Part shown: piece by piece, positions 1,878 to 55,948 of the stretch
How the letters are laid out: every line of letters begins with the position of its first letter
Numbering within the stretch: the stretch's first letter is position 1
Virus record (IMG/VR): IMGVR_UViG_3300007513_000004
Span: 1 to 64,000 of that record
Strand: one strand, 5' to 3'
DNA: 64,000 nucleotides
Notes under the pieces: model-generated
Databases searched by the model: none
Seen by the model: the letters and a program-made list of their open reading frames with translations, nothing else
Told to the model about the DNA's origin: nothing
Position numbers and translations under genes: made by a program

Positions 1878-2227
1878 TGGTGGAGGCGGGCGGAATCGAA
1901 CCGCCGTCCAAAGCAACTCATACTTCAAGTCATTCACAAGCTTGTCTAGATTTTATAATCTAGCAAATCCTCCCGCTAAGTTATACCATCATATCCGCAG
2001 GATGATATGAGTCGAGTATTTTTTGTTATCAGTGATACTAGTCCACCTATCTCACGTTGGGTAACAAGGCCCTGAGAAGCCCCGGAACTATGCCGCTAAA
2101 GCGACTGGTTCGTAGTAATAATTGTTATTGGCAATTATAGTTTTTTGCAACAAGTTTTGAGTCATTCGTTACCGTAGACTGCTTGCACTATTCGCACTTA
2201 CTACCCTGTCGATACCATTTCGCCCCC
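1878..2227 (-). ncRNA. ssrA: tmRNA; tag peptide ANNNYYYEPVALAA* (2132-2088)
   Basis: 5' GGGGGCGAAATGGTATCGAC, 3' GGTTCGATTCCGCCCGCCTCCACCA, resume context ATAATT-GCC, tag ending ALAA. Confidence 0.96.
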
Positions 2228-53792: not shown

Positions 53793-54959
53793 TTATTGGG
53801 CGCTTGCCCAAAACATATCGCCCTCATACTCTTTCAAGGCTTCGCCCAAATCTTCATCCTCATCGGTCCTTGCGGCTATTGCCTCCTCCATACTTGAGTA
53901 TTGAGGCTCTTGAGGTCTTCCGGTTCCGAAAAGTTCGTTAACATCTTGAGTAGAAATCGGAGAAGGTTGACCCATAGGAACTGCAGAAGGAACCGGAGGC
54001 GGAGGCGGAGCATCTTGGACCATTGCTGCCAAACTTGGAATCTCATCCCACTTCTTCCAGCCAGGCCAGCCTGTTGTCCAGACTAAATGCCTGGCATTAA
54101 TATCTTCTGAAACCTTAGCCGCTATTTCCTCTACGGATAATTTGGCCTGACCGCTTGGGCCATGATAATGCATTGTGGCTGTCTCCGGAATAGGCGGAGG
54201 GGCTGCTCCTTCTGGGGCGGCTCCCTCTGGGGCTGCAACCGCAGCTGCACCTCCGGCGGCCATCACGGCTGCAACAGCATCTTTTTCTGACATTTCTTTT
54301 TCCGCCATAAGCTGAGAAGCCCTTACGGCCTGCTCTTCGGTTAAGCTCTCTCTCTCCATTAAATCTTTAATTTTTTCTGCTGCTTTGTATTGTTCTTCGA
54401 AAATATCAACTAGGACATTCCAAGCATCAACCCATCCATTTTCATTGTCCAGACCGGTCAACATTCTGGTCGCCGCATTGGCTCCCCAGTAATCATAGAT
54501 GTTATCTTGAAAATATTTTTCATCTATTTTAATATTTTCAAAATCTCCTTTCATCATCTTTTTCATTCTTACATCAAAGATTTCTCGAACAAAGGTTCCG
54601 CCTCTCGCCTTCCCGGCCGGAAAAGAACCAGGGCCGTCTATAAGGTCAGCCTGAGTCAAAGTTGTTCTGAAAGATTCCCAAAGATCTCCGGCAGGGGTGG
54701 CCGTTAGGTCTGTTACTCCCATTGTCTCAAAAACAGACATAGCATCTTCGCTTGCTTTGCTGACGCCAACAGCGGCAGTGGTTCCTGCTACGGCTGCGAT
54801 GATAGCTGCCGTCAGGTATGACACTCCAAAAATGGTTGCAGTTATCGGTTCTGCCATTTTTATCAATGCATCTATCTCATCAGATTCTTTCATCAATCTT
54901 CTTGAATCTAATTCGTTTGCAATTTTAACAAGCTGTTCCAAGGAAGCATTGTTTAACAT
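53793..54959 (-). CDS. shared-leader protein with hydrophobic segment and GYF_2 (DUF4339)-like domain
   Basis: EQLVKIANELDSRRLMKESDEIDALIKMA; YHGPSGQAKLSVEEI...LVWTTGWPGWKKWDEIPSL between Pro-rich linkers. Confidence 0.8.
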   Translation of the reverse strand: MLNNASLEQLVKIANELDSRRLMKESDEIDALIKMAEPITATIFGVSYLTAAIIAAVAGTTAAVGVSKASEDAMSVFETMGVTDLTATPAGDLWESFRTTLTQADLIDGPGSFPAGKARGGTFVREIFDVRMKKMMKGDFENIKIDEKYFQDNIYDYWGANAATRMLTGLDNENGWVDAWNVLVDIFEEQYKAAEKIKDLMERESLTEEQAVRASQLMAEKEMSEKDAVAAVMAAGGAAAVAAPEGAAPEGAAPPPIPETATMHYHGPSGQAKLSVEEIAAKVSEDINARHLVWTTGWPGWKKWDEIPSLAAMVQDAPPPPPVPSAVPMGQPSPISTQDVNELFGTGRPQEPQYSSMEEAIAARTDEDEDLGEALKEYEGDMFWASAQ

Positions 54960-55026
54960 GACCTTTGTCTCCTAGTTGTTAACTCAAATATTACCATGTC
55001 CATTTGACTTTACCTTCACCTTTAAT

Positions 55027-55074
55027 CCACTTTATTACCACTTCAACCCACTTTGCTCCACTATTTACCACCAC
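55027..55074 (-). promoter_or_regulatory. five AGTGG/GGTGG direct repeats at 10-11 bp period (MraZ-box-like)
   Basis: CCAC[T/C] on + at 55027, 55038, 55048, 55058, 55068. Confidence 0.7.
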
Positions 55075-55279
55075 ATAGAAATTATGGGCGAGTTTATCTT
55101 TGATAATCAAAGGCAAATAGATGTATAAAGAGGGTCTGTTCTCTGAAATTCCATTTTTATATAAAAAGATGTGTAATAAAAACCAATGATTTTCAATAAA
55201 AAATTAGTGATGAAAAAAGATGCTTATTGAAACGAATAAGAGATTTTTAAAAAACATATAATTTATATAGTGAAACGAA

Positions 55280-55474
55280 TCAATCAAAGCATCCTATTTC
55301 ATCTGCCCTAATTAGTAATTTCATATGCTGATTTGTGGTCAAACCTTTCTTTCCCAGAGAAATATTTTCATAGCTTTGCTCTATCCTTGGAAGAAGTATT
55401 TTGCATTCCGGTTCGCGGGGCGGTTCACAATAACTAATCATTACAAAAAAGAATATAGATAATTTAAAATTCAT
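55280..55474 (-). CDS. small exported/lipoprotein-like protein
   Basis: hydrophobic N-terminus followed by Cys. Confidence 0.55.
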   Translation of the reverse strand: MNFKLSIFFFVMISYCEPPREPECKILLPRIEQSYENISLGKKGLTTNQHMKLLIRADEIGCFD

Positions 55475-55480
55475 TTAAGA

Positions 55481-55948
55481 TTAAACATCTTCGGGGTTTA
55501 TAAGGCTCCATATATCCTGCCATCTTGCGCTGGGCTTTTGATGATCAGGAGGAACAACATCGTAAACCTTTCGGCCTTCCTCTATTTCTTCCATCTGTTC
55601 TGGACTAACCTTTACCACGGATGCTTCGCCAGAATATGTTTCCTCATCATCTAAAACGACTATATGAAAGTTCATATCTCCAGGCGGCTCTTTGTCTAAC
55701 TCGTCTATAGCCTTTTGTATTTCTGGCCAATTTTCTGCAAGATAACTTCTGTATTCCTCTGGAGTTCTACGCCTTTCTGATCGATCTTTCTTCTTTTCTC
55801 TATATTCATCAAGGTCAACTAATTCGCCAAAGCCTTCTGGACTATCCAGTTCTGTCGAAAGCTTTACAAGGGAATCCAAAAGATCCGCTTCTTTCAGAAG
55901 ACCTCTGCTGTCCAGTTCGTTTGCTATTTTAATTAATTCCTTTAACAC
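55481..55948 (-). CDS. shared-leader protein
   Basis: MLKELIKIANELDSRGLLKEADLLDSLVKLS. Confidence 0.85.
   Translation of the reverse strand: MLKELIKIANELDSRGLLKEADLLDSLVKLSTELDSPEGFGELVDLDEYREKKKDRSERRRTPEEYRSYLAENWPEIQKAIDELDKEPPGDMNFHIVVLDDEETYSGEASVVKVSPEQMEEIEEGRKVYDVVPPDHQKPSARWQDIWSLINPEDV

What the first reader, a model, noticed from the sequence alone, without database searches (positions are those of the whole stretch)
55027..55074. Helically phased GTGG pentamer array resembling an MraZ operator
Seen: minus strand GGTGG-TAAAT-AGTGG-AGCAA-AGTGG-GTTGA-AGTGG-TAATAA-AGTGG upstream of 54959. Known: MraZ binds GTGG-type direct repeats at 10-bp period in the dcw promoter. Inference: the phage either puts this operon under host MraZ (coupling to cell-division state), titrates MraZ, or encodes its own AbrB/MraZ-like regulator elsewhere.
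Basis: partly seen in the sequence, partly recalled or inferred. Interest (0 to 1): 0.6.

Follow-up and report, generated by a model that had tools for sequence, protein, structure and literature searches.

The report
MraZ-type operator in a jumbo phage
An uncultured marine jumbo phage carries, just after a host-type promoter, five evenly spaced GTGG boxes that look like the site where the bacterial cell-division regulator MraZ binds, so one phage operon may be tied to that host regulator.

Summary
On the minus strand, GGTGG-N5-AGTGG-N5-AGTGG-N5-AGTGG-N6-AGTGG lies at 55072..55027. It is the only chain of three or more phased GTGG in the 223-kb phage record. No chain of five appeared in 300 composition-preserving shuffles.

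The array is non-coding, has no Rfam match, and folds worse than shuffled sequence. It starts 8 nt after a sigma-70-like promoter (TTGATT-18-CATAAT) and ends 67 nt before the start of a 388-aa membrane protein gene.

In a scan of bacterial species genomes, 86 of 121 matches to 3xAGTGG at 10-bp spacing sat directly upstream of mraZ, across many phyla, with the -10 box 7-8 nt before box 1. That is the layout seen here. Published work defines MraZ boxes as GTG(G/T) with six spacer bases, usually three boxes.

The resemblance is therefore strongly supported, and I think host MraZ most likely binds here. Binding is untested and the host is unknown. No MraZ or AbrB gene was found in the two thirds of the phage genome that is held. 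Conservation says little, because the relatives are nearly identical across the whole block. I found no report of an MraZ operator in a phage.

The parts
55105..55110 (-). Predicted -35 hexamer, TTGATT
   Evidence: Consensus scan. It is the only sigma-70-like match in the 320-nt intergenic region and is unchanged in all relatives.
55098..55112 (.). Perfect 15-bp palindrome CTTTGATTATCAAAG overlapping the -35 hexamer. It may be a second operator.
   Evidence: Read from the sequence. The pattern TTTGAT-N-ATCAAA occurs once in 223 kb. It is invariant in the relatives.
55081..55086 (-). Predicted -10 hexamer, CATAAT, with an 18-nt spacer to the -35 hexamer
   Evidence: It ends 8 nt before the in-phase box 1. 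In bacterial Pmra promoters the modal gap is 7-8 nt. The substitutions in relatives fall in the spacer (TCGCC to TTACC), not in either hexamer.
55068..55072 (-). Box 1, GGTGG, with an overlapping GTGG at 55074-55071. The predicted transcription start falls at or inside this box.
   Evidence: Identical in all relatives. In M. genitalium the transcription start lies inside box 1 (PMC12957436).
55058..55062 (-). Box 2, AGTGG
   Evidence: Identical in all relatives.
55048..55052 (-). Box 3, AGTGG
   Evidence: Identical in all relatives.
55038..55042 (-). Box 4, AGTGG
   Evidence: It reads AATGG in every relative other than the identical copies of this phage.
55027..55031 (-). Box 5, AGTGG, 11 bp after box 4
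   Evidence: It reads GGTGG in the relatives, so GTGG is kept.
55017..55021 (-). Degenerate in-phase sixth unit, AGGTG
   Evidence: It reads AGATG in the relatives.
54960..55026 (-). Remainder of the predicted leader. It is poor in C and unstructured, has a Shine-Dalgarno sequence AGGAG at 54973-54969, and includes a substitution hot spot at about 55020-54990.
   Evidence: The fold of 55078..54945 gives -10.3 kcal/mol against -16.8 for shuffles, z = +2.29. Alignment. An insertion and a deletion at 55007-55009 appear in other metagenomes.
53793..54959 (-). Downstream gene of 388 aa. It has an N-terminal KIANELD motif, one predicted membrane segment and a weak GYF_2 domain near the C-terminus. 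Function unknown. It is the first gene of a run of small minus-strand genes.
55280..55474 (-). Upstream 64-aa ORF with a signal-peptide or lipoprotein-like N-terminus (MNFKLSIFFFVMISYC...). It bounds the intergenic region and is not a plausible DNA binder.
   Evidence: Most substitutions against the relatives are synonymous.
54900..55653 (-). Mosaic block that is 88-99% identical among related marine phage contigs, while the flanks are 50-75% identical. It contains the promoter, the array and the leader.
   Evidence: Parts of the block are held by runs from 14 studies.

Best explanation
The array is an MraZ-type operator, that is, a set of MraZ-binding repeats, placed directly after the -10 element of a host-type sigma-70 promoter. 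That promoter drives the 388-aa membrane protein gene and the small genes behind it.

Proposed mechanism: host RNA polymerase starts at or inside box 1. Host MraZ puts one subunit into the major groove at each GTGG box, all on one face of the helix, and binds cooperatively along five boxes. It would then block or reduce transcription, as it does at the bacterial mra promoter. Expression of this phage operon would depend on how much free MraZ the infected cell holds.

Shown here: the array, its statistical significance, its non-coding and unstructured nature, its layout, and how specific this motif is to mraZ promoters in bacteria. Inferred: promoter activity, the transcription start, MraZ binding, and the direction of the effect.
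For: 1. [quoted passage not shown] In B. subtilis there are three GTGG[A/T]G repeats, the only triple repeat in the genome, and they are required for repression.
2. In GTDB species genomes, 86 of 121 matches to AGTGG-N5-AGTGG-N5-AGTGG lie just upstream of, and on the same strand as, an mraZ-like ORF, across many phyla. Pfam confirmed MraZ in all five genomes checked.
3. The layout is the same. In the bacterial operators the -10 box ends 7-8 nt before box 1, seen in 15 of 40 against 3 of 40 at a control offset. In the phage CATAAT ends 8 nt before box 1. A match at that offset by chance is about 0.006, from 37 matches in 2 x 19.9 kb.
4. Boxes 2-4 with their spacers match a real mraZ operator (L233) at 24 of 26 positions.
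5. The phage has five boxes. Among 86 bacterial arrays, 64 have three, 21 have four and one has six.
6. The array is unique in the phage record and absent from shuffles.
7. It is not coding, not a known RNA and less structured than shuffled sequence.
8. Weak host hints point to a Shine-Dalgarno-using, proteobacterium-like host, a group that has MraZ.
Against: No binding or expression data exist. The host is unknown, and some bacteria lack MraZ: it was found in 7 of 14 control genomes and not in Synechococcus.

The promoter match is only 9 of 12 positions, and such matches are not enriched in this region (37 found against 31.5 expected).

The defining genomic context is missing, since the array is not upstream of mraZ or the dcw cluster.

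Conservation is uninformative because the whole block differs by only 1-4% among relatives. Boxes 4-6 are the most variable part of the block.

Viral contigs with 3xAGTGG arrays in general do not show the Pmra layout (3 of 33 against 4 of 33). One large viral family puts such arrays next to DnaA boxes, so in phages the motif is not always an MraZ operator.
Confidence: 0.5

Rival explanations
1. The array binds a different protein, either phage-encoded or another host factor that recognises phased direct repeats. Candidates are iterons of a replication origin or a partition site, or the operator of a phage regulator. On this view the likeness to MraZ boxes is convergent.
For: An AT-rich stretch lies just upstream, as at origins. 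A family of at least 36 distinct viral contigs carries 3xAGTGG arrays right after perfect DnaA boxes, so such arrays occur in origin-like settings in phages. None of 117 viral arrays is next to mraZ. A third of this phage genome is unsearched and could encode the binder.
Against: There are no DnaA boxes near the array, and their count in the window is at chance level. No initiator, ParB or regulator gene is adjacent. Only 5 bp per unit is conserved, whereas iterons are typically 17-22 bp (my own knowledge). The array is not repeated anywhere else in the genome. GC skew does not turn here. The -10-to-box layout fits a promoter operator.
Confidence: 0.2
2. The element acts as RNA. The transcribed leader carries five AGUGG repeats and is kept unstructured and poor in C. 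It would serve as a landing pad for the ribosome or for an RNA-binding protein that tunes translation of the 388-aa gene.
For: If transcription starts near 55074, the whole array is in the 5' UTR. The leader folds significantly worse than shuffles, z = +2.29, with 199 of 200 shuffles folding at least as well. That suggests selection against structure. A Shine-Dalgarno sequence, AGGAG, follows.
Against: A strict 10-bp period is a property of the DNA helix and has no obvious meaning for single-stranded RNA. No Rfam family matches. Bacterial mraZ leaders contain the same boxes simply because the operator lies downstream of the transcription start. The part next to the ribosome site is the least conserved.
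Confidence: 0.1
3. The array is an inert hitch-hiker. The phage lineage picked up a host mra promoter as a ready-made strong promoter, the boxes came along, and they are now decaying and no longer matter.
For: The block is a mosaic module exchanged among related phages. Boxes 4-6 differ between lineages, and in the relatives box 4 is broken (AATGG).
Against: No sampled bacterial operator is homologous beyond the boxes; the best identity is 52% over 100 nt. The window lineage has more canonical boxes (five) than 85 of the 86 bacterial operators surveyed, which does not look like decay. Even a hitch-hiking operator would still be bound in a host that has MraZ.
Confidence: 0.12

Closest known systems
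MraZ-binding repeats (MraZ boxes) of the bacterial mra/dcw promoter Pmra
   Same: GTGG core. Six spacer bases, giving a 10-bp period. Direct repeats on the coding strand. Starts 7-8 nt after the -10 hexamer, so the transcription start falls in box 1. A-rich bases precede each box. A leader of a few tens of nt separates the array from the first gene.
   Different: The element sits in a phage, not upstream of mraZ or rsmH. It has five boxes instead of the usual three, and the last spacing is 11 bp. A 15-bp palindrome overlaps the -35 hexamer. No cognate mraZ is in the same record. Binding is untested.
AbrB/SpoVT-type operators (same DNA-binding fold as MraZ)
   Same: These are targets of swapped-hairpin, 'cradle' DNA binders that read the major groove on one helix face (PMC12957436).
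   Different: AbrB sites have no sharp consensus or strict repeat (my own knowledge). No PF04014 gene was found in the phage record.
Phased direct-repeat promoter sites of other regulators (lambda CII TTGC-N6-TTGC; OmpR/PhoB-family boxes; ParR-parC iterons)
   Same: Short direct repeats at 10-11 bp spacing at or next to a promoter, read by cooperative binding on one face of the helix (my own knowledge).
   Different: The core sequences differ. Those sites flank or precede the -35 hexamer rather than follow the -10. None has a GTGG core.

Membership tests
MraZ operator (MraZ-binding repeats) | Box core GTG(G/T) | tested here: met
   Five GTGG boxes. Definition from PMC12957436 and bioRxiv 10.1101/2022.02.09.479790.
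MraZ operator (MraZ-binding repeats) | Six spacer bases between cores, a 10-bp period, in direct orientation | tested here: met
   Spacings are 10, 10, 10 and 11 bp, all on the same strand. MraZ is reported to tolerate altered spacing at high concentration.
MraZ operator (MraZ-binding repeats) | At least three consecutive boxes | tested here: met
   Five boxes here. Of 86 bacterial arrays, 64 have three, 21 have four and one has six.
MraZ operator (MraZ-binding repeats) | Array starts just after the -10 hexamer, so the transcription start is in or near box 1, and it points toward the regulated gene | tested here: inconclusive
   The predicted CATAAT ends 8 nt before box 1, which matches the bacterial mode of 7-8 nt. 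The promoter is only a 9-of-12 consensus match, and no transcription-start data exist. The one RNA run found did not cover the array.
MraZ operator (MraZ-binding repeats) | Located upstream of mraZ at the head of the dcw cluster | tested here: not met
   The downstream gene is a phage membrane protein with no MraZ motif. No PF02381 match anywhere in the record.
MraZ operator (MraZ-binding repeats) | A cognate MraZ protein is present in the same cell | not testable with these tools
   The host is unknown. The phage record, 223 kb of about 330 kb, has no MraZ or AbrB-family gene. The longer 277,573-nt contig could not be searched. There are weak hints of a proteobacterial host, and the marine proteobacterial genomes checked all have MraZ.
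MraZ operator (MraZ-binding repeats) | Specific, cooperative binding by MraZ and MraZ-dependent repression | not testable with these tools
   This needs a gel-shift or reporter assay.
Iteron-type replication origin | Repeats next to an AT-rich unwinding region, with DnaA boxes or an adjacent initiator gene | tested here: not met
   An AT-rich stretch is present. No DnaA box lies within 2.8 kb, and the count in the window is at chance. The neighbouring genes have no replication domains.
Structured cis-regulatory RNA (riboswitch or leader) | Stable or conserved secondary structure, or a match to a known family | tested here: not met
   No Rfam match with an E-value below 0.5. The leader folds worse than shuffles, z = +2.29. 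The 346-nt region gives z = -0.08.

The most novel reading that the evidence does not exclude
A jumbo phage has wired part of its programme to the host's cell-division regulator. The five-box array would make this operon respond to free MraZ. Once the phage genome has replicated to many copies, the arrays would also soak up the scarce MraZ pool and so change expression of the host dcw cluster (ftsL, ftsZ, wall synthesis) during infection. That would be the first MraZ operator known outside the mra promoter with a defined biological role, and the first in a virus.
Probability: 0.15. Interest if true: 0.8.

Novelty: new variant of a known kind. Interest (0 to 1): 0.55.

Why it matters
MraZ is one of the most widely conserved bacterial regulators, yet almost its only accepted direct target is its own promoter. 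In B. subtilis the triple repeat occurs nowhere else in the genome.

A complete operator of above-average length inside a phage would be a natural second target. It would show that phages can listen to, or interfere with, the host's cell-division control.

It is also easy to test, because published gel-shift and GFP reporter assays for MraZ boxes already work across species in E. coli. Two literature searches pairing MraZ with bacteriophage or promoter terms found no report of such a site in a phage.

Tried and rejected
- Coding repeat: rejected. The 41-aa TTG frame across the array has no ATG or ribosome site, changes mostly non-synonymously and is truncated differently in the relatives. The antisense frames are closed.
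- Known RNA family: none found.
- RNA structure: none; the leader is less stable than shuffles.
- Repeated promoter module within the phage: the 800-nt block is unique in 223 kb.
- Phage-encoded MraZ, AbrB or MazE-fold protein: not found in the record.
- The neighbouring 64-aa ORF as the binder: rejected, because it looks like a secreted or lipoprotein peptide.
- Direct capture from a sampled host promoter: no bacterial operator is alike beyond the boxes.
- Conservation test with distant relatives: failed for lack of material. Searches with the 388-aa protein and its alignment returned only contigs that share the near-identical block. A 30-mer from a diverged copy seen in a hydrothermal-vent run found nothing in the viral contigs.
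- The idea that phages in general carry Pmra-like arrays: not supported. Viral 3xAGTGG hits lack the -10 layout. The four-box pattern gave 97 viral hits, within about three-fold of a rough chance estimate that rests on an assumed size for the viral collection, and many of them tandem repeats.
- Expression data: the only RNA run listed matched 36 nt elsewhere in the block and is not evidence of transcription.
- Host assignment: relatives cannot be drawn for a virus record. A tmRNA comparison gave only a weak lean toward Gammaproteobacteria.
- Function of the 388-aa protein: nothing beyond a weak GYF_2 domain.
- Eraso et al. 2014 on E. coli MraZ could not be read. Statements about E. coli boxes rest on my own knowledge and on secondary citation.

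Full report
**1. What is there**

The window is the first 64 kb of a 223,402-bp linear virus record. CheckV rates it 67% complete. A longer contig shows the genome is about 330 kb.

On the minus strand the sequence reads CATAAT-TTCTATGT-GGTGG-TAAAT-AGTGG-AGCAA-AGTGG-GTTGA-AGTGG-TAATAA-AGTGG-ATTAA-AGGTG. The boxes start at 55072, 55062, 55052, 55042 and 55031.

This is the only chain of three or more GTGG at 9-11 bp spacing on either strand of the whole record. In 300 shuffles that keep local composition there were 17 chains of three, one of four and none of five.

**2. Context**

The array lies in a 320-nt AT-rich intergenic region. Upstream is a 64-aa ORF (55280-55474) and downstream a 388-aa ORF (53793-54959), both on the minus strand.
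- The 64-aa ORF is real, since its substitutions against the relatives are mostly synonymous. It starts with a signal-peptide or lipoprotein-like sequence, so it is not a DNA binder.
- The 388-aa protein has an N-terminal KIANELD motif, a membrane segment and a weak GYF_2 domain. Nothing else is recognisable.
- The only sigma-70-like match in the intergenic region is TTGATT-18-CATAAT at 55110-55081. Its -10 hexamer ends 8 nt before box 1.
- A perfect 15-bp palindrome overlaps the -35 hexamer and is unique in the genome.

**3. What it is not**

- It is not coding. The frames across the array lack a start codon and ribosome site, change non-synonymously and end at different places in the relatives.
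- It is not a known RNA.
- It is not structured. The 134-nt leader folds at -10.3 kcal/mol against -16.8 for shuffles, z = +2.29.
- It is not part of a repeated module.
- It is not flanked by DnaA boxes.

**4. Test of the MraZ resemblance**

I scanned one genome per bacterial and archaeal species for AGTGG-N5-AGTGG-N5-AGTGG.
- 86 matches (71%) lie directly upstream of, and on the same strand as, a 110-180-aa ORF with DxKGR in its first 40 residues, which is mraZ. They come from Pseudomonadota, Bacillota, Bacteroidota, Actinomycetota, Acidobacteriota, Chloroflexota, Verrucomicrobiota and others.
- Several of the remaining matches sit at contig ends and look the same.
- Pfam confirmed MraZ in all five genomes I checked.
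- In the bacterial operators the -10 hexamer ends 7-8 nt before the first box: 15 of 40 non-redundant cases, against 3 of 40 at a control offset. The phage gap is 8 nt.
- The bases before each box are A-rich in both sets.
- Phage boxes 2-4 with their spacers match one real operator at 24 of 26 positions.
- Box counts in bacteria are three (64 cases), four (21) and six (1). The phage has five.

Published work agrees.
[quoted passage not shown] The transcription start is inside box 1. One subunit binds per box in the major groove, and binding and repression fall stepwise as boxes are mutated (PMC12957436).
- In B. subtilis the triple repeat occurs only at Pmra and is needed for repression (bioRxiv 10.1101/2022.02.09.479790).
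- In Mollicutes the site is a series of AAAGTG[T/G] repeats (PMC8475190).

**5. Limits**

*Conservation.* Homologues of the 388-aa protein share 45-50% amino-acid identity and occur on marine metagenome contigs. All of them carry the array, with boxes 1-3 identical, box 4 as AATGG and box 5 as GGTGG. However, they share a 750-nt mosaic block (55653 to about 54900) that is 96-99% identical, including its coding parts, while the flanks are 50-75% identical. Identity of the boxes therefore says little. The stretch 55041-54990 is a local hot spot of change. Runs from 14 studies hold parts of the block. Laying four of those runs on the window added the same variants. It also showed one diverged copy in a different context in a hydrothermal-vent sample, which I could not retrieve.

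*Promoter.* The match is 9 of 12 positions, and such matches are not enriched in this region. Its weight comes from its position relative to the array.

*Regulator.* No MraZ or AbrB-family gene is in the record, but a third of the genome is unseen.

*Host.* It is unknown.
- Shine-Dalgarno usage argues against Bacteroidota: 48% of ORF starts have an SD-like core, against 15% at random positions.
- The 3' end of the phage tmRNA matches 228 of 401 sampled Gammaproteobacteria but only 4 of 301 Bacteroidota. This is a weak hint.
- The Gammaproteobacteria tally includes one unpublished genome, G044, and no claim depends on it.
- MraZ was missing from 7 of 14 control genomes.

*Other phages.* Viral contigs with 3xAGTGG arrays are never next to mraZ (0 of 117). 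As a group they lack the -10 layout. One large family places the array after DnaA boxes. In phages the motif is therefore not automatically an MraZ site. This case stands out by its five boxes and its Pmra-like layout.

**6. Verdict**

The array meets every sequence-level criterion of an MraZ operator except its genomic address.

The most likely mechanism is cooperative binding of host MraZ over the transcription start of a host-type promoter, repressing a phage operon of unknown function (confidence about 0.5). The rivals are:
- another repeat-binding protein or an origin or partition site (0.2);
- a leader acting as RNA (0.1);
- an inert captured promoter (0.12).

I found no report of an MraZ operator in a phage. 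I rate it a new variant of a known kind, of moderate interest, and directly testable with existing assays.

Noticed in passing
window 54900-55653: A mosaic block of about 750 nt is 96-99% identical among related marine phage contigs whose flanking genes are only 50-75% identical. It spans the end of a 155-aa gene, a 64-aa ORF, the promoter, array and leader, and the first codons of the 388-aa gene. Inside it, 55041-54990 is a hot spot with about 27% differences.
   Followed up: partly
window 55280-55474 (-): A 64-aa ORF with a signal-peptide or lipoprotein-like N-terminus and three cysteines. It was not called as a gene on the relatives' contigs, yet its substitutions are mostly synonymous. 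It is probably a real small secreted or membrane peptide.
   Followed up: partly
window 27431, 54923, 55927, 59518, 60440 (all minus strand): Five proteins start with the same roughly 30-residue motif, (L/I)xELIK(I/L)A(N/S)ELD(S/K)(R/K)GLxKEADxxDxL. Both genes flanking the array have it. It may be a shared N-terminal targeting or interaction module.
   Followed up: partly
window 55098-55112: A perfect 15-bp palindrome, CTTTGATTATCAAAG, overlaps the predicted -35 hexamer. It is unique in the 223-kb record and invariant in the relatives. It may be a site for a dimeric regulator.
   Followed up: partly
window 55065-55076 (-): A conserved mini-ORF, ATG TGG TGG TAA (Met-Trp-Trp-stop), sits at the predicted transcription start and overlaps box 1.
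   Followed up: no
window 1878-2227 (-) and 10790-44629: A phage-encoded tmRNA with tag peptide ANNNYYYEPVALAA, and nine tRNA genes.
   Followed up: partly
G000:C1:141964-144438 (-), 133545-135464 (-), 127809-129671 (-), outside the window: The phage encodes an 824-aa fusion of a glycosyltransferase with a tubulin/FtsZ-family GTPase domain (weak PhuZ match), a full-length PrkA serine kinase, and a class II ribonucleotide reductase.
   Followed up: no
L009, L011, L099, L112 and about 36 other distinct viral contigs: A large family of viral contigs carries AGTGGAG-type triple repeats at 10-bp spacing directly after two or three perfect DnaA boxes (TTATCCACA), followed by a conserved ..TCGTAAT.. 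stretch, in long ORF-poor regions. It looks like a phage replication origin. No Rfam match was found.
   Followed up: partly
L325:30-100: An unrelated marine viral contig has GATATAAT followed 8 nt later by TGTGG-N5-AGTGG-N5-GGTGG-N6-AGTGG-N5-AGGTGG. This is the same -10-plus-five-box layout and the same 10, 10, 11 spacing as the window. It lies in a long non-coding early-type region with strong sigma-70 promoters.
   Followed up: partly
run X6, record 12 (1365-nt contig), matching window 55021-55062: A hydrothermal-vent metagenome holds a diverged copy of boxes 2-5 (5 mismatches in 42 nt). Its flanks differ, and it has an extra AAAGTGGG box upstream. This would be the informative distant relative, but it could not be fetched.
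   Followed up: partly
L015, L017, L038, L054, L055: Five viral contigs share a conserved 3xAGTGG element. In L015, the only one where it was measured, it lies about 137 nt upstream of a 677-aa ORF whose N-terminus resembles class II ribonucleotide reductase. L015 gave no Rfam match at the gathering threshold.
   Followed up: no
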